From assembly GCF_031769215.1 (NCBI RefSeq), contig NW_026782105.1:1-64000 (forward strand): a DNA stretch of 64,000 bases, written 5' to 3'. This DNA comes from Ylistrum balloti. Taxonomy: Eukaryota. The position numbers and the translations under genes are program-made. A model generated the notes under the pieces. It was not told where the DNA came from and made no database searches. It saw nothing but the letters and a program-made list of their open reading frames with translations. This document shows, piece by piece, positions 1 to 6,360 of this stretch (within the stretch, counting starts at the first letter, position 1; each line of letters opens with the position of its first letter).

Positions 1-33
1 CTCTATCATATATATAGTATCATAGTTTCTACC

Positions 34-3000
34 ATGCAGAACGATTCATTATGCACACTGTCGGACCAGATACAGGCTGCGGTTGGAAAGTCACAAAACG
101 AAATACTCGGGCATTTGGATACATTAATTTCACAAAAGTTGAGCTCGTTTGAGAGAAAAATGTGTGAAAATTCTGAGGCATCTTTAAACAAGATACAAGA
201 AACAATTCAGTGTACGGATACCTACAAATTCAAAAAGAGAAGTTGCGAGGAACAGTACAAGTTCAATACCAAAGTGCGCGGGAAATTATTGGACGCCGCG
301 CAGGCCGTCAGTACGGACATGGACACCGCCAGGCTTAAGATACAGGAGGGTATGTCGCTTATAGACTATCGCAACAAGCTAATTAAGTTGGCGGACAGTT
401 CTGAAGCAGGCTGGAAAACCGTCGATGAGTATGTAGCAAATCCTATAGCGTCGGACTCCGACGATGAAAGGAAAATCGACAGGGCCAGCTCCAAGGCAGT
501 TAAAAAGGCAAAGGCGGAAAAGTTAAAGTCCAGCAGGGGAAGACAGCGTTTCAACCCTTATCAAAGAGAGACTTTTGTGTCCAGGAGCCAGACAAACGCC
601 GCTACTACGACCGACAGAACAGGTCCTTTCCCACGGGGCGGGACCAAGCCCGGTACATGCTTTGGGTGTGGAAAGGCCGGACATTGGCGACAAGAGTGTC
701 CGGAAATCAAAGGAGTCGCCTCGGCTGTATCCGGATATAAGATAAGTGGTTCTTTATTTGATATGCATGAAAAAGTATCGGCGAAGCAGGACGCAGGTAA
801 GGTAGGGGCGACACAGGACGCTCCACGTGTCACATGTGATACTTCGCCAGTGGGGCGCTTGAAGGGTAAGAGCCAGTATTGGGCAGACCAAGGTACCATT
901 GAAGTAGTACAATCTATCATCGAGAGAGGTTATAAAATTCCTTTTCACGAAATTCCACCAAGGGTGTCTTTGTCAAATAACAAAACCGCAAAAGATAACC
1001 CCGATTTTGTCGTGGGGGAGATAACTAAGCTTTTACGGTTAGGTTGTGTGTCGGAAGTTTCGTCAGAGCCCGCGGTCATAAATCCGCTCACTGTAGCTTT
1101 CAATCAATCAGGTAAGCCCCGCCTAGTTTTGGATTGCAGGCACATAAACCCTTTTTTGCATAAATTCAAGTTTAAATACGACGATGCAAGGGTAGCACGG
1201 GATGTTTTCCAGCCAGGAGATTTTTTGTTCACTTTTGATTTGAAGTCTGCTTACCACCATATCGAAATTTTTGAAGAGCACAGGCAATTTCTCGGTTTTG
1301 AGTTTGAAGTGGAAGGCAAAACACGCCAGTTTGTTTTCAATGTGTTACCGTTTGGTATCTCTACTGCTGGTTACGTGTTTACCAAGGTTCTAAGGGAGGT
1401 GGTCAAATCTATCCGTTTATTAGGTCACAAATTGGTCATGTATTTGGACGACGGTATTGGAGGTCACGAGACAGAGGGCGGGGCTAACGAGTCCAGTAGA
1501 TATGTCAGACAGGCATTGATCGATTACGGTTTTCTCATAGCCGAGGAGAAGTCCAATTGGGTAGCTTCCCAGCATGTCACGTGGTTAGGTTACACGTGGT
1601 CGATGGGAGAAGGCGTGGTCAGGGTCACGTCGGGTCGTGTCGAGCGGCTTTTGTATTGGCTGACCAATACGATGACACATGTCAAACAGAAAGACCTGCC
1701 TTTGCTCTCGGCCAGGTACATAGCGGGCATAGTAGGTCAGGTCATATCAATGCAAGGTGTTGTCGGTCACGTGGCTAGACTACGTACACGGGAGTTGTAC
1801 AGGTGTGTATTGGCTAGAGCCAGTTGGAATGCGCGTGTTTTGCTCACGTCGGGAGCTCTAGACGAGATCCAATTTTGGTTGTCTAACGTAAAGGCACTGA
1901 ACGATAAGGGTTCACAGTTAAAGCAACACCTAGTCTGTGACGCCATACTTTGTACTGATGCATCCGGTGAGGGATACGGGGGTTATGTTCAATATGTGGA
2001 CACATCAGGCAGGTGTGAGCATGTTGGAGTGACGCAAGGTGTCAACGGGTGCACATACATACACGATACAAACAGTATCGAGACAGGTGCAAGCAAATGT
2101 TACCAAGGTGTAATCCCCCAGGGGGACTTTGTAACGGTACATGGTACAGATGTTTTTCAACACCCCCAGGGGGCTTGTGAGGTCCGACCCCGGATATATT
2201 TAGGCCATGATCATGATGGAACAAAATGGGGTCAAACGTTCGAGTTTCTTGGTCAATGCAACAGCACCCAGGGTGTTAGGGGGTCTCCGAGACCCGGGTT
2301 TTGCTGCGGTAGCAGTATTAGTCCCACGGGAGGACTAGTAGGTGGCCCAGTGAGTGACGTGATTGGTCTGCAGGGCAGCGAGGTAAGCGTTTTGGATCGC
2401 TCTCTTCCTACAGTAAGGGATCTTTACCACATGGATAAACATGTCGCGTTGGGAACATGGGATGAACGGGAGAAAAGGTATAGCTCAACTTGGAGAGAGT
2501 TAGAAGCAGTCAAAAGGGTGTTGTTGGCTAAGGTCGATATGGTCAAAGGTAAGCAGGTAAAACTGTTAACAGATAACAGAAACGTTTGTTCCATAGTGAA
2601 AACTGGTAGCAGGAAGCCAGACCTACAGAGGGTCGCACGTGAGATTAACGAGGTGTTGGATTATAATAACACGGGCGTTAGTACACAGTGGCTACCAAGG
2701 ATTAGTAACAGTACCGCCGATTACTTGAGTAGATGTAAAGACTGTGACGATTGGTCGGTGCAGTCATGGGTTTTTGAGGAGTGTCAGTTATTATGGGGTC
2801 CACATCAAATCGACCGGTTCGCGACAGATTATAACAGCAAATGTGTGCGTTTTAATTCCAAGTGGTGGTGCCCGGGTACAGAGGCAGTCGATGCTTTCAC
2901 GGTAAGATGGCAGGGAGTCAACAACTGGTTAGTACCTCCCCCTAGACTCGTTTGCGGTGTGGTTAGCAAAATGAGGGACGAAGGAGCTTATGGGACCATA

Positions 3001-3198
3001 ATTGTCCCCCATTGGAGGAGCGCGGCATACTGGCACTTATTGTGTCCTAAGGATGGGGCTTTCGATTCTTTCATAGTAGATTATCGTATACTGCCCAGTA
3101 GAAAAGTCACACTGAGGGGGAGGGGGAACAATGGATGTTTCGGAGCCAGTATTTTGGGTTTCGACATGTTGGCCCTCCGGTTAGACTTTAGACATTGA
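34..3198 (+). CDS. Gag-Pol polyprotein of DIRS-type element (CCHC zinc knuckle, reverse transcriptase, RNase H, Dam-like N6-adenine methyltransferase domain)
   Basis: 1054-aa ORF with accATG start. CFGCGKAGHWRQEC knuckle at 658-699. RT motifs RLVLDCR, DLKSAYHH, LPFG and YLDDG (1441-1455). RNase H residues TDAS / RELEAV / TDNRNV / ADYLSR. C-terminal WGPHQIDRFA...NNWLVPP...IIVPHW is typical of the DIRS MT domain. Confidence 0.93.
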   Translation: MQNDSLCTLSDQIQAAVGKSQNEILGHLDTLISQKLSSFERKMCENSEASLNKIQETIQCTDTYKFKKRSCEEQYKFNTKVRGKLLDAAQAVSTDMDTARLKIQEGMSLIDYRNKLIKLADSSEAGWKTVDEYVANPIASDSDDERKIDRASSKAVKKAKAEKLKSSRGRQRFNPYQRETFVSRSQTNAATTTDRTGPFPRGGTKPGTCFGCGKAGHWRQECPEIKGVASAVSGYKISGSLFDMHEKVSAKQDAGKVGATQDAPRVTCDTSPVGRLKGKSQYWADQGTIEVVQSIIERGYKIPFHEIPPRVSLSNNKTAKDNPDFVVGEITKLLRLGCVSEVSSEPAVINPLTVAFNQSGKPRLVLDCRHINPFLHKFKFKYDDARVARDVFQPGDFLFTFDLKSAYHHIEIFEEHRQFLGFEFEVEGKTRQFVFNVLPFGISTAGYVFTKVLREVVKSIRLLGHKLVMYLDDGIGGHETEGGANESSRYVRQALIDYGFLIAEEKSNWVASQHVTWLGYTWSMGEGVVRVTSGRVERLLYWLTNTMTHVKQKDLPLLSARYIAGIVGQVISMQGVVGHVARLRTRELYRCVLARASWNARVLLTSGALDEIQFWLSNVKALNDKGSQLKQHLVCDAILCTDASGEGYGGYVQYVDTSGRCEHVGVTQGVNGCTYIHDTNSIETGASKCYQGVIPQGDFVTVHGTDVFQHPQGACEVRPRIYLGHDHDGTKWGQTFEFLGQCNSTQGVRGSPRPGFCCGSSISPTGGLVGGPVSDVIGLQGSEVSVLDRSLPTVRDLYHMDKHVALGTWDEREKRYSSTWRELEAVKRVLLAKVDMVKGKQVKLLTDNRNVCSIVKTGSRKPDLQRVAREINEVLDYNNTGVSTQWLPRISNSTADYLSRCKDCDDWSVQSWVFEECQLLWGPHQIDRFATDYNSKCVRFNSKWWCPGTEAVDAFTVRWQGVNNWLVPPPRLVCGVVSKMRDEGAYGTIIVPHWRSAAYWHLLCPKDGAFDSFIVDYRILPSRKVTLRGRGNNGCFGASILGFDMLALRLDFRH

Positions 3199-4268
3199 AA
3201 ACTTACACATGTTCATACCATACTGAGCATTGTTTTACTGTGTTTATTGTTACAGGCATAGGACTGAGGAAGTCGATCAGCGATGCCGTCAAAGCTTCTG
3301 GGGTAACGGAGGGTTCCGATCTGCACGCTCTGACCGAGGGTATGGCTGGCAGACTTTTACTAAGCAGGAGTGTCAACACAGGCACCAAGTACTATGGAGC
3401 TTTCGCGAAATGGGAACATTTCATTTCCGGACATGGTTTTTCGTCTATCCCGGCAAATCCCATACACGTGGCATTATATTTAAATTCTTTATTGGAAAAG
3501 GGAGGGACTTACGCAGTGGTGTCGTCTGCAGTATATGCTATCAAATGGGTGCACAATCTTAACGGACACATCGACCCTACAACAAACTCATTCGTACAGA
3601 ACTTAATTGAATTTTCCAAACGAGAGGCTAAAAATCCTGTTTGCAAAAAGGAACCGGTCACGACTGACATTTTGATCAATTTGTGTGGAATGTTTTTGAA
3701 TGAGAATGACTTGTTGGTAGTGAGAGATCTTGCCATGATTTTGTTAGGGTTTTCCGGTTTTTTACGTTTTAACGAGCTCAGTAGTTTGCGTTGCTCTGAT
3801 GTTCAGTTTTTCGAGGGGCATTTAACGCTCAATATCAGGAAAAGTAAAACAGACAAATATCGCTTTGGTAGTCAAGTGGTCATCAGTAAAGGTTCGACTG
3901 TAGCTTGTCCGTACACCATGTTATCAAGGTATGTTGAGTTATCAAAAATTGACTTAAGTTCGGATCATTTTTTGTTTAAGCAAGTTTATCGTTCCGGTCA
4001 GGGTTGTAAGCTTATTAACAAAAATAAGCCACTTAGTTACACAGGGGCTAGGCAAGCTGTCATGAAAAGGTTGAAACTAGTTTCCAATGATACAAATTTT
4101 GGTTTACACTCGCTCAGAGCAGGGGGCGCCACAGTGGCCGCCAACAACGGAGTGAACGATCGATGTTTCAGGAGGCATGGCCGCTGGAAAGGCGAATCTA
4201 GCAAGGATGGTTATGTCGCTGACTCTTTGGAGTCTCGTTTACTGGTAACACAGAAGTTAGGTTTGTAA
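3195..4268 (+). CDS. Tyrosine recombinase (phage-integrase family) of the DIRS-type element
   Basis: Catalytic set present: FLRFNEL (R), KSKTDK (K), HSLRAGGAT (HxxR), GRW, GYV (Y). The ORF track starts at TTG. The first ATG is at 3342 and a splice acceptor lies at 3254-3255, so the true start is uncertain. Confidence 0.92.
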   Translation: MKTYTCSYHTEHCFTVFIVTGIGLRKSISDAVKASGVTEGSDLHALTEGMAGRLLLSRSVNTGTKYYGAFAKWEHFISGHGFSSIPANPIHVALYLNSLLEKGGTYAVVSSAVYAIKWVHNLNGHIDPTTNSFVQNLIEFSKREAKNPVCKKEPVTTDILINLCGMFLNENDLLVVRDLAMILLGFSGFLRFNELSSLRCSDVQFFEGHLTLNIRKSKTDKYRFGSQVVISKGSTVACPYTMLSRYVELSKIDLSSDHFLFKQVYRSGQGCKLINKNKPLSYTGARQAVMKRLKLVSNDTNFGLHSLRAGGATVAANNGVNDRCFRRHGRWKGESSKDGYVADSLESRLLVTQKLGL

Positions 4269-4351
4269 TTAATATGGTTATTTGATCAATTATTCAAAGG
4301 CGGTTAGGTATTCCCCAACCACAACCCCCTTGCCCTTTCTTTGTTAATTCT

Positions 4352-4431
4352 CTAATTCGTGACGGGCTAGTACGGCAAATGAGTATTTGCGGGTTTGAGT
4401 TTTCTTTTCGGGCACGAAGTGGAGAGAAGAC
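4352..4431 (+). repeat. Split direct repeat B1 (80 bp)
   Basis: ctaattcgtgacggg...ggagagaagac, identical to 5036-5115. Confidence 0.95.
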
Positions 4432-5035
4432 TTAAATATTCCCGCGTTTCGGTAGTATAGCGGGAATAGTTCGTCTTCTCAGGCACGTAGAGCACGTGCG
4501 TATGCCCAGGTAAGGGTGGGTGCGCGGGTGAATAGTCATTCTCTAGCTCTCCGTCTAGCAGTGCAGTCCAGTTAATTTAGTTAGTTAGTGTGCCTATCAG
4601 TATTATTATATGTAGTTGGTTTGCTCCGTTTTCTAGTCTTGCTATTTTATGCTTGCATTCCTGGCGAGGAAATCTGGAAGTCTGGGTATGCTTAGTGGGA
4701 GTGTGATTGGCTGATATTGTGTTAGTGGCGCTCCGGTAGAACGATTGTTTTTATTATTTTTTTTTTTTCGACACCGGTCCTTGTGTCGGCCCGGAGAACG
4801 TATTGCAATTGGAGGTAATCGATTCCAGCCCCGTTGGACACAGGTTTCCGGGGATTATCTCCGGTTTTTCCTGGGCGCGCGATACATTCTGTGATGGGAG
4901 GTGAGTATGGAGTGTCTAGGACGCTCTCGTGGGTGAGGAGTGTGTGCGTTAGGGACGTTTGCGTCACGTCTGTCGGAGTGAGATTCGTACGTACAATGTA
5001 TTTTCTACACCATGTATTATTAAACGCCTACTGCA

Positions 5036-5115
5036 CTAATTCGTGACGGGCTAGTACGGCAAATGAGTATTTGCGGGTTTGAGTTTTCTTTTCGGGCACG
5101 AAGTGGAGAGAAGAC
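5036..5115 (+). repeat. Split direct repeat B2 (80 bp), probable right terminus of the element
   Basis: Identical to 4352-4431; the flanks diverge on both sides. Confidence 0.9.
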
Positions 5116-5491
5116 GCAATATTCGTCACAGTATTCGTCGCTGTAAAGTCTCAAATGCCCTGGGCTACGTACGTGAGTACACATCTACCCGCCGGGAAAC
5201 TATCGGTCGGAGAGGATTAGTGGTCTAGGCGGGATACTAATTATTTAATTGGGCTGTGATTTCACCTTGATAAGGCAGCAGGACGGACAATTTCACCTGT
5301 ATTACACGAGGAATGAACTCTCAGCTCACATTTTCATAAAACATATAAAAAAGAAGTGATTTTTTTTCGCAAAATATCACCAGACTTACTATTTTATCGC
5401 CAGTTTTCTGTTCATCCAAAAAGCAATATGTTATTTTGCTGAATGTTTTAATAATCGTTTACTTACTGGCAAATACTGTGTTACATAAATA

Positions 5492-6360
5492 TACGAGGGT
5501 TGATTAATAACTCATCTAACCTCATATTTAAGTGTTGGACGTTTGGCGGACATATTGCATACCATTTTTCAACATAATCCCATTCAGTATCTACCCTCTT
5601 TTGCCAGCGATGTTTAAGGGTCACAATGCTACATTTAAAGAAGTCCTTTTCCAGACCGTTCAGAAAGTTCTCCACTGCATGCATGACGTCATCATTCAAA
5701 CAAAAGTGGGTATTGGAAATACACATTTTTAAATTTGGAAATAGATGAAAGTCTGATGGAGCCAGTTCAAACGAATAAGGTGGATGCTCATAAATCCAAA
5801 GACACATGACATGACACCGATAGCAATGACAGACTTGTGAACAGGGACATTGTCCTGATGGAACAATACCATAGTTGTCCGCGGCGCTTGAGTCTAACAT
5901 TTTTCTAAACTGCCTAAGAAGTAATGTATATGTGTTATTGATCGTTTGTACTATTTGCAGATAAGCGACCATAAGTTTATTATCAGCATCACAGAAAACT
6001 GAGCCCATAACCTTTCCAACAGATTGATAAGTATTTGCTTTCTTTGGTGGGGATGAGCCAGGATGCTTCCATAGTTTACACCGTATTTTGGCCTCTAGGG
6101 TGACTAACGCTTCATCCATAGTCACAAACCTCGGCAGAAAGTTAGCGGGATCTACCTCTAAATGCTTCAGATTAGCACGCGATAAAATTCGCCTGGTGTG
6201 CTTCTGATTAGCTGTCAGAAGTGTTGGTACCCAACGGGCTGATAGCTTTCTCATTGCAAAACATCCGTAAGAATGGAATGTACTCTTTCCTGTGAAATCC
6301 CAACTGTACTGGCTATATATCTCTCTGTAACTCGCCTTTCAGCCATAACAATATCATGGA
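5492..6360 (-). mobile_element. Degenerate mariner (DD34D) transposon, 5'-truncated
   Basis: RKLSARWVP, VTMDE, HQDN (in a shifted frame) and HPPYSFELAPSDFHLFP motifs. TA+CGAGGG terminal sequence at 5492. Frameshifts near 6255 and internally. No matching TIR seen at the other end. Confidence 0.88.

What the first reader, a model, noticed from the sequence alone, without database searches (positions are those of the whole stretch)
349..3256. Phase-matched splice sites could make a Gag-tyrosine recombinase fusion from the same transcript as Gag-Pol
Seen: the YR frame has no ATG until 3342, but a pyrimidine-rich acceptor (tgtttattgttacAG|GC) lies at 3254-3255, 57 nt past the pol stop. Two good donors in gag, AGG|GTATGT (exon end 349) and CAG|GTAAGG (exon end 796, after the zinc knuckle), are both phase 1, as is the acceptor. 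Splicing 796 to 3256 removes RT-RH-MT and gives an open 591-aa Gag(CCHC)-YR; splicing 349 to 3256 gives a 442-aa product. Inference: the element may set its Pol:recombinase ratio, and package YR through Gag, by alternative splicing instead of frameshifting or overlapping ORFs. Caveat: ATG 3342 alone could give a 308-aa YR.
Basis: partly seen in the sequence, partly recalled or inferred. Interest (0 to 1): 0.72.

Follow-up and report, generated by a model that had tools for sequence, protein, structure and literature searches.

The report
Spliced Gag-recombinase message in bivalve retrotransposon
A young, multi-copy tyrosine-recombinase retrotransposon carries a deeply conserved splice acceptor just before its recombinase gene, so the recombinase is most likely made from a spliced message that removes pol and joins it in frame to Gag, although no spliced RNA has been seen yet.

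Summary
All are phase 1 and give open 442- and 591-aa products.

The acceptor is well supported. A T-rich tract plus CAG|G lies directly before the first conserved recombinase codon in 13 of 14 diverged relatives from bivalves and a sea urchin; a hemichordate copy has TAG|A in a weak tract. Protein conservation starts at that codon. The 29 codons before ATG 3342 are conserved. Five relatives have no Met for 100-160 residues. The recombinase frame relative to pol varies.

The donor is not settled. NCBI models in two bivalves use its homologue. Donor 796 scores highest and has positional analogues in two scallop elements. Donor 349 is weak, but a hemichordate NCBI model uses its homologue. Very strong phase-1 donors are enriched over synonymous shuffles (11 against 3.4).

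There is no direct RNA evidence. Contigs from four public runs show only the unspliced form of a ~93% relative. This scan found the same thing earlier on another piece of this genome (s1-254211). No paper in the searched library describes it.

The parts
1..33 (+). End of the 5' leader. The contig starts inside the element; in the other copies a 145-nt A1 repeat plus 2 nt lie upstream.
34..3198 (+). Gag-Pol ORF (1054 aa): Gag with a CCHC knuckle, RT, RNase H and an adenine-methyltransferase-like domain; no protease
658..699 (+). CCHC zinc knuckle of Gag (aa 209-222)
347..355 (+). Candidate donor AGG|GTATGT, exon end 349, phase 1. It is weak (score rank 12) but homologous to the donor of a Saccoglossus NCBI model.
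794..802 (+). Candidate donor CAG|GTAAGG, exon end 796, phase 1. It is the top-scoring GT in the ORF and lies in the unconserved linker between the zinc knuckle and Pol.
1109..1117 (+). Candidate donor CAG|GTAAGC, exon end 1111, phase 1, in the Gly codon of the RT motif NPLTVAFNQSGKPRLVLD. It is the donor best shared with relatives and is used in NCBI models of two other bivalves.
2546..2554 (+). Further strong phase-1 donor-like site AAG|GTAAGC, exon end 2548, in RNase H; shared with two scallop elements
3199..3255 (+). Non-coding gap after the pol stop: a T-rich tract ending in acAG (AG 3254-3255), proposed as the 3' end of the intron. It holds one out-of-frame ATG (3209); a second, at 3283, lies just inside the YR exon.
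3256..4268 (+). Recombinase exon: 336 codons (plus the junction Gly codon) and the stop. Protein conservation with relatives begins at its first codon (G-I-G-L).
3342..3344 (+). First in-frame ATG of the YR frame (Met 30 of the exon). This position is Met or Leu in relatives.
4345..4431 (+). B1 arm of the split direct repeats
4432..4576 (+). A2 arm, identical to the A1 found upstream of position 1 in other copies. It contains a strong donor-like site TATGCCCAG|GTAAGG.
4577..5028 (+). 452-nt spacer between A2 and B2
5029..5115 (+). B2 arm; 3' end of the element

Best explanation
This is a young, probably active PAT-like retrotransposon of the DIRS order: Gag-RT-RH-MT, then YR, bounded by split direct repeats.

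Unspliced RNA encodes Gag-Pol and serves as the template for copying. The recombinase has no initiation codon of its own. It is reached by splicing from a phase-1 5' splice site inside gag-pol to the 3' splice site at 3254-3255. Most or all of pol then acts as an intron, and a Gly codon is rebuilt at the junction (G|GC).

The product is a Gag-containing recombinase fusion: 696 aa from donor 1111, 591 aa from 796, or 442 aa from 349. More than one donor may be used.

Shown: the sites, their phases and the open frames; deep conservation of the acceptor and of coding that starts exactly at it; absence of a usable AUG in several relatives; enrichment of strong phase-1 donors.

Inferred: that splicing actually occurs in this host, which donor is used, and that the Gag moiety brings the recombinase into the particle and that splice efficiency sets the Pol:YR ratio.
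For: (1) Acceptor. In 13 of 14 diverged elements a pyrimidine-rich tract plus [ATG]CAG|G lies directly before the first conserved YR codon; M. californianus has CAG|A. These cover several families in this genome, Mizuhopecten, Pecten, Solemya, Mytilus, three Logan contigs and the sea urchin Diadema. The YR is 335-338 aa from that codon in the intact copies. The acceptor is the best of 250-340 AG sites in 7 elements and ranks 2nd in the window.

(2) Among 63 homologous proteins whose called ORF runs past that Gly, the preceding residue is S, T or A (an NCA codon) in 50. The residues upstream are rich in F, L, S, V and I, which is a translated T-tract.

(3) The 29 residues before Met 3342 are conserved: G[IL][GN]L..[VI]..A[LVI]..[SA]G[VI]. 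In L037, L040, L041, L042 and L048 the first Met lies 102-161 residues in, and there is no in-frame ATG upstream.

(4) The YR frame relative to pol is 0, 1 or 2 in different elements, and the gap from the pol stop to the acceptor is 18-57 nt in most intact elements (three are 413-482). This excludes a fixed frameshift.

(5) NCBI models join Gag plus the N-terminus of Pol to the YR at this acceptor. Mizuhopecten P0122 has donor AAG|GTAAGC and acceptor ctacAG|GC, and its 1851-nt intron is the rest of an intact 987-aa gag-pol ORF. M. californianus P0187 is annotated as a 608-aa isoform X1 at 12 or more loci, with shorter X2 and X3 isoforms. M. trossulus P0042 is a third case. The donors of P0122 and P0187 are homologous to window 1111, and that of P0042 lies four codons upstream.

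(6) GGT-AAG at that Gly-Lys occurs in 6 of 9 lineages that have the Gly (p about 0.001).

(7) Very strong phase-1 donors number 11 against 3.4 +/- 1.9 in synonymous shuffles (0 of 300 shuffles reach 11). Phase 0 shows no excess.

(8) Saccoglossus model P0316 uses the Gly codon homologous to window 349.
Against: No spliced RNA has been seen. In four runs (labelled RNA only by guess) the contigs of a ~93% relative run unspliced across 349, 796, 1111 and 3198-3342, and no joint ends at 3256. Contigs do drop rare forms.

No intron-less DNA copy exists among the copies in this genome.

No donor column is universal. Pecten, Solemya, Diadema and one family in this genome lack the 1111-type GT. L041, L044 and L038 have no strong donor on my score.

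Gene models elsewhere pick many different G|GT donors (P0126, P0191, P0193, P0194, P0094), so donor choice in models may be ab initio.

Met 3342 exists, and 308-aa proteins starting at that position are widely annotated.
Confidence: 0.68

Rival explanations
1. The recombinase is translated on its own from ATG 3342 (308 aa), either from the unspliced RNA by reinitiation or leaky scanning, or from an internally promoted 3' RNA. The GT/AG matches are then incidental.
For: ATG 3342 is present in all 13 copies. About half of the relatives have Met at this position, and 308-aa proteins are widely annotated. Only unspliced contigs were seen.
Against: The 29 codons upstream are conserved as protein. 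Conservation starts at the acceptor, not at the Met. Five relatives have Leu there and no Met for 102-161 residues. Two out-of-frame ATGs (3209, 3283) lie between the pol stop and 3342. This reading does not explain the invariant T-tract plus CAG|G.
Confidence: 0.15
2. A leader donor in the A1 repeat (TATGCCCAG|GTAAGG, 103 nt before the gag ATG) splices to 3256, as in a retroviral env message, and the recombinase starts at Met 3342 without any Gag part.
For: The A1/A2 site scores as high as donor 796. The layout recalls retroviral major splice donors (general knowledge).
Against: The ATG just before this site would put the joint in phase 2, out of the YR frame (and reading). No comparable leader donor is found in 6 of 9 relatives with sequence upstream. 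It does not explain the conserved codons 3256-3341 or the relatives without Met.
Confidence: 0.08
3. A short intron, frameshift or readthrough fuses the recombinase to the end of full-length Pol, giving one Gag-Pol-YR protein. Some gene models in Pinctada and Mytilus suggest this.
For: Models P0193, P0094, P0148 and P0178 join the methyltransferase end directly to the same acceptor.
Against: In the window no phase-1 GT of any quality lies in the last ~240 nt of pol; the nearest is 2956, score 1.1. The YR frame is closed by TAG 3189-3191, leaving two codons of overlap and no slippery site. The frame relation varies among relatives.
Confidence: 0.05

Closest known systems
PAT-like elements of the DIRS order (tyrosine-recombinase retrotransposons with split direct repeats)
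   Same: Gag, RT, RNase H, a methyltransferase-like domain and a tyrosine recombinase in that order. A1 ... B1-A2-B2 direct repeats. No inverted terminal repeats and no protease.
   Different: Published descriptions found here speak of separate or overlapping ORFs and say nothing on how the recombinase is expressed (PMC3266345, PMC9210276). This element has gag and pol in one ORF, a 452-nt spacer between A2 and B2, and a splice-acceptor signature before the recombinase.
Spliced subgenomic messages of retroviruses and gypsy-type errantiviruses (env), and the spliced gag message of copia (from general knowledge, not tested here)
   Same: One primary transcript serves as genome and as pol message. 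A spliced form expresses a downstream gene, and splice efficiency sets the ratio.
   Different: Here the downstream gene is the integration enzyme itself. The donor lies inside the coding region, so the product would carry Gag, and in one version the first part of RT, as an N-terminal fusion. The whole of pol, or most of it, is the intron.
NCBI predicted proteins 'integrase/recombinase xerD homolog' with a Gag N-terminus: Mizuhopecten P0122, Mytilus californianus XP_052061441.1 (P0187), M. trossulus XP_063395983.1 (P0042), Saccoglossus XP_077866782.1 (P0316)
   Same: The same acceptor position before the conserved recombinase N-terminus. Phase-1 G|GT donors homologous to window 1111 (the two bivalves P0122 and P0187; P0042's lies four codons upstream) or to window 349 (Saccoglossus).
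   Different: They are automatic gene models filed as host genes. Their RNA support could not be checked here. They are 30-60% identical to the window's proteins.

Membership tests
DIRS order, PAT-like group | Reverse transcriptase and RNase H together with a tyrosine recombinase instead of a DDE integrase | tested here: met
   Pfam RVT_1 (E 7e-16), RT_RNaseH (2e-5) and Phage_integrase (1.5e-9)
DIRS order, PAT-like group | Methyltransferase-like domain after RNase H | tested here: inconclusive
   The Dam hit has E 0.008 and 16 bits, below the cut-off of 28. Homologous Gag-Pol proteins carry a precomputed PF05869 hit.
DIRS order, PAT-like group | Split direct repeats (A1 ... B1 A2 B2) rather than inverted terminal repeats with an internal complementary region | tested here: met
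   B1 4345-4431 matches B2 5029-5115 at 97%. A2 4432-4576 recurs just upstream of position 1 in 12 other copies. No inverted repeats were found. One deviation: a 452-nt spacer lies between A2 and B2.
Retroelements that express a downstream gene from a spliced subgenomic RNA | Conserved, phase-compatible 5' and 3' splice sites flanking the skipped genes | tested here: met
   The acceptor is kept in all 14 diverged elements compared (CAG|G in 12, CAG|A and TAG|A in one each). Phase-1 donors are enriched, and the donor at 1111 is shared by several lineages.
Retroelements that express a downstream gene from a spliced subgenomic RNA | Spliced RNA observed | tested here: not met
   Contigs from four runs show only unspliced forms of a ~93% relative, and no joint ends at 3256. 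This is a weak test: the material is contigs only, of a relative, and the RNA status of the runs is guessed.
Retroelements that express a downstream gene from a spliced subgenomic RNA | The downstream ORF lacks its own usable start | tested here: met
   There is no in-frame ATG between the upstream stop and the conserved N-terminus in 12 of 13 elements. The first Met is 102-161 residues in for five relatives. The window has Met at residue 30 of a conserved N-terminus.

The most novel reading that the evidence does not exclude
Across metazoan PAT-like elements, from bivalves to sea urchin and hemichordate, pol is an alternatively spliced intron with several phase-1 donors. One transcript would then yield Gag-Pol plus a graded set of Gag-recombinase fusions (Gag N-terminus-YR, Gag-YR, Gag plus the start of RT-YR). 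The Gag part would deliver the recombinase into the replication complex, and donor choice would tune integration. This would be a previously undescribed expression strategy for a whole order of retrotransposons.
Probability: 0.35. Interest if true: 0.75.

Novelty: new variant of a known kind. Interest (0 to 1): 0.62.

Why it matters
How DIRS-order elements make their recombinase, and in what amount relative to Pol, is not explained in the papers I could search. A conserved acceptor with coding that starts exactly at it gives a concrete, testable answer: a spliced Gag-recombinase message, analogous to retroviral env messages but producing a capsid-tethered integration enzyme.

It also matters for annotation. 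Genome pipelines already file these fusions as host 'xerD homolog' genes at dozens of loci in mussels, scallops and an acorn worm. ORF-based transposon annotation, meanwhile, reports a truncated 308-aa recombinase.

The family here has about 13 copies that are 99.3-99.9% identical, so it is a good subject for RT-PCR or long-read RNA work.

Tried and rejected
(1) Public reads. One search and one lay were allowed. All 24 runs hold under 10% of the words. The four runs laid carry a ~93% relative as contigs, unspliced, with no joint at any candidate site. This is uninformative about rare spliced forms.

(2) Intron-less DNA copies in this genome. Neither the DNA search nor the search with the natural fusion protein P0122 gave a match running across the junction.

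(3) A sponge-type locus (L056, protein P0189). It has one continuous Gag-RT start-YR ORF between split direct repeats and at first looked like a retro-copied spliced RNA. I rejected it. The sequence after the joint (TSGAWPLL) matches the C-terminal methyltransferase motif W.SA.FWPLL of Pol, and the related Ephydatia locus L058 keeps a Pol C-terminus there. It is therefore an internal deletion derivative.

(4) Gene models as evidence for a particular donor. Models in Pecten, Solemya, Pinctada, Mytilus and Mizuhopecten use at least six different G|GT donors, so I treat them as support for the acceptor only.

(5) A universal donor column. None exists.

(6) A leader donor. It is present in this family only.

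(7) Three word-index protein searches and the one exhaustive protein search found no Logan (read-assembly) protein with a Gag-YR fusion.

(8) Literature. Four searches and six papers gave no report of splicing for recombinase expression in DIRS, PAT or Ngaro elements. The library lacks the older subscription papers by Goodwin and Poulter.

(9) The joined (spliced) products of this window were only checked for length and open frame in a script.
Full report
**What is there**

The window starts at the first base of contig C248, inside a retrotransposon. The Gag-Pol ORF runs from 34 to 3198 and encodes 1054 aa. It carries a CCHC knuckle, RVT_1, RT_RNaseH and a weak Dam-like hit.

A second frame is open from 3192 to 4268 and carries Phage_integrase. 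This frame is closed by TAG 3189-3191, and its first ATG is at 3342.

The 3' end has direct repeats:
- B1 is 4345-4431 and B2 is 5029-5115.
- A2 is 4432-4576. It recurs as A1 just upstream of position 1 in the other copies.

This is the split-direct-repeat layout of PAT-like members of the DIRS order, with an extra 452-nt spacer between A2 and B2.

The genome holds about 13 full-length copies. They are 99.3-99.9% identical and lie at different sites, so the family is young.

**The observation**

All three sites are as described:
- AGG|GTATGT with exon end 349.
- CAG|GTAAGG with exon end 796.
- ttattgttacAG|GC with exon start 3256, 57 nt after the pol stop.

All are phase 1, and the joined frames are open at 442 and 591 aa. 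I checked the joined frames only for length and openness in a script.

On a rough donor matrix the best three of 250 GT sites in the ORF are 796, 2548 and 1111. All three are phase 1. Site 349 ranks 12th. Phase agreement is weak evidence on its own, because GTAAG or GTGAG in phase 2 would create a stop codon inside the ORF.

**The acceptor is real by comparison**

I compared the window with 13 diverged relatives:
- Five other families in this genome (L038 is not one of them; these are L045, L048, L049, L050 and the family of L033-35 for the donor column).
- Mizuhopecten (L037), Pecten (L039), Mytilus californianus (L038) and Solemya (L043).
- Three Logan contigs (L040-L042).
- The sea urchin Diadema (L044) and the hemichordate Saccoglossus (L057).

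The recombinase N-terminus G-[IL]-[GN]-L... aligns in the bivalve and sea-urchin elements.

Directly before it every element has a T-rich tract ending in an AG. In 12 elements this reads [ATG]CAG|G. M. californianus has CAG|A and Saccoglossus has TAG|A.

From that codon the recombinase is 335-338 aa in the intact copies.

Twelve of 13 elements have no in-frame ATG between the upstream stop and that codon.

In L037, L040, L041, L042 and L048 the first Met lies 102-161 residues inside the conserved protein.

The recombinase frame relative to pol is 0, 1 or 2 in different elements. The gap from the pol stop to the acceptor is 18-57 nt in most intact elements and 413-482 nt in three.

On a simple 3' splice-site score, the acceptor is the best of 250-340 AG sites in 7 of 14 elements. 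It ranks 2nd of 325 in the window and within the top 8 in 13 elements; the Saccoglossus site ranks 82nd of 245.

Among 63 homologous proteins whose called ORF extends upstream of the Gly:
- The preceding residue is S, T or A in 50, which fits an NCA codon.
- The residues before that are dominated by F, L, S, V and I, which is a translated T-tract.
- Columns 1-17 after the Gly are conserved.

These features together are the signature of a 3' splice site at the start of a coding exon. That position is a conserved hydrophobic residue, Met or Leu, 30 residues into a conserved N-terminus.

**The donor**

Natural database proteins show the fusion.

*Mizuhopecten P0122 (718 aa).* This NCBI model is Gag plus the first part of Pol joined to the recombinase.
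- In its locus the donor is GGAAAG|GTAAGC, in phase 1.
- The acceptor is ttctacAG|GC.
- The 1851-nt intron is the remainder of an intact 987-aa gag-pol ORF, whose stop lies 34 nt before the acceptor.

*Mytilus californianus P0187 (608 aa).* It uses TCCG|GTAAGA at the same Gly of the RT motif NPL[ST]VA...SGK.RL. The 608-aa form is annotated as isoform X1 at 12 or more loci, beside shorter X2 and X3 isoforms.

*M. trossulus P0042.* It joins four codons earlier, to the same acceptor.

In the window the homologous site is CAG|GTAAGC at 1111|1112. It is phase 1 and gives a 696-aa product.

GGT at that Gly is found in 7 of 9 lineages that have the Gly, and GGT-AAG in 6 of 9. The codon shares in these ORFs are 0.40 and 0.42, which gives p about 0.025 and 0.001 if shared ancestry is ignored.

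The site is not universal. Pecten, Solemya, Diadema and one family in this genome lack it.

Two scallop elements have their own very strong phase-1 donors in the same linker: L037 CAG|GTAAGT and L039 AAG|GTGAGT.

*Enrichment test.* Over 12 families, donors scoring 6.5 or more number 11 in phase 1 against 3.4 +/- 1.9 in synonymous-codon shuffles, and 0 of 300 shuffles reach 11. Phase 0 shows 2 against 1.6.

*Caution on gene models.* Models elsewhere choose at least six different G|GT donors. I therefore do not treat model donors as proof of use.

**What speaks against it**

There is no RNA evidence. The single run search returned 24 small runs, labelled RNA only by guess, each holding under 10% of the sampled words. 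The four runs I laid contain contigs of a ~93% relative. These contigs run unbroken across 349, 796, 1111 and the pol-recombinase gap, and no joint ends at 3256. Contigs lose minor isoforms, so this is weak evidence.

No intron-less DNA copy was found in this genome.

A sponge-type locus that looked like such a copy turned out to be an internal deletion derivative.

**Mechanism proposed**

The unspliced RNA is both the template and the Gag-Pol message. A fraction of it is spliced from a phase-1 donor in gag-pol to 3256. Donor 1111 is the most likely, 796 is plausible, and 349 and 2548 are possible. Splicing rebuilds a Gly codon and yields a Gag-containing recombinase.

The element has no protease domain, so the fusion would probably stay intact. 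Two points are inference only: that Gag carries the recombinase into the replication complex, and that splice efficiency sets the Pol:recombinase ratio.

**Comparison and novelty**

The principle matches the spliced env messages of retroviruses and gypsy-like elements, and the spliced gag message of copia (general knowledge, not tested here). The difference is that here the integration enzyme is the spliced product, and it is fused to Gag.

The papers I could search describe DIRS and PAT ORFs as separate or overlapping and do not mention splicing. Older subscription papers were not searchable.

My analysis reproduces it independently.

**Verdict**

Noticed in passing
window 4501-4517 (A2), and the same site in A1, 103 nt upstream of the gag ATG in full copies (L002:1423-1439): The terminal repeat holds a very strong donor-like site, TATGCCCAG|GTAAGGGT, preceded by an ATG that would put it in phase 2. 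No comparable leader donor is seen in most relatives.
   Followed up: partly
window 4432-5115; L018-L021: A2 and B2 are separated by a 452-nt spacer, which the canonical A1...B1-A2-B2 layout lacks. Isolated A-spacer-B units of about 690 nt occur elsewhere in the genome at 76-99% identity. They resemble solo remnants left by recombination between the repeats.
   Followed up: partly
window 4834-4877: A ~40-nt piece of the spacer is matched by several short, very deep contigs (depth 95-355; bin totals 127-534) in all four runs. These contigs continue into unrelated sequence. This suggests a motif shared with other abundant repeats or transcripts.
   Followed up: no
window 2000-2445: This is the in-frame insertion in RNase H noted by another reader (s1-258951). 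One run's contig of the ~93% relative lacks 102 nt at 2165-2266, so the insertion varies in length between close relatives. The relative also has a 24-nt in-frame insertion near 841.
   Followed up: partly
window 3230-3562 (+): A 110-codon open frame overlaps the start of the recombinase exon in another frame. It has no Pfam match and is probably chance.
   Followed up: partly
window 5481-6254 (-): A 257-aa ORF just beyond the element's 3' end has a weak Transposase_1 (mariner-type DDE) hit (E 1e-5). It is probably a remnant of an unrelated DNA transposon next to the insertion.
   Followed up: partly
L056:4853-7962 (ENA assembly ERZ21784910) and L058 (Ephydatia muelleri): Sponge-type relatives with split direct repeats carry a single 764-aa Gag-RT start-methyltransferase end-recombinase ORF. 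This is an in-frame internal deletion derivative that keeps Gag and the recombinase.
   Followed up: partly
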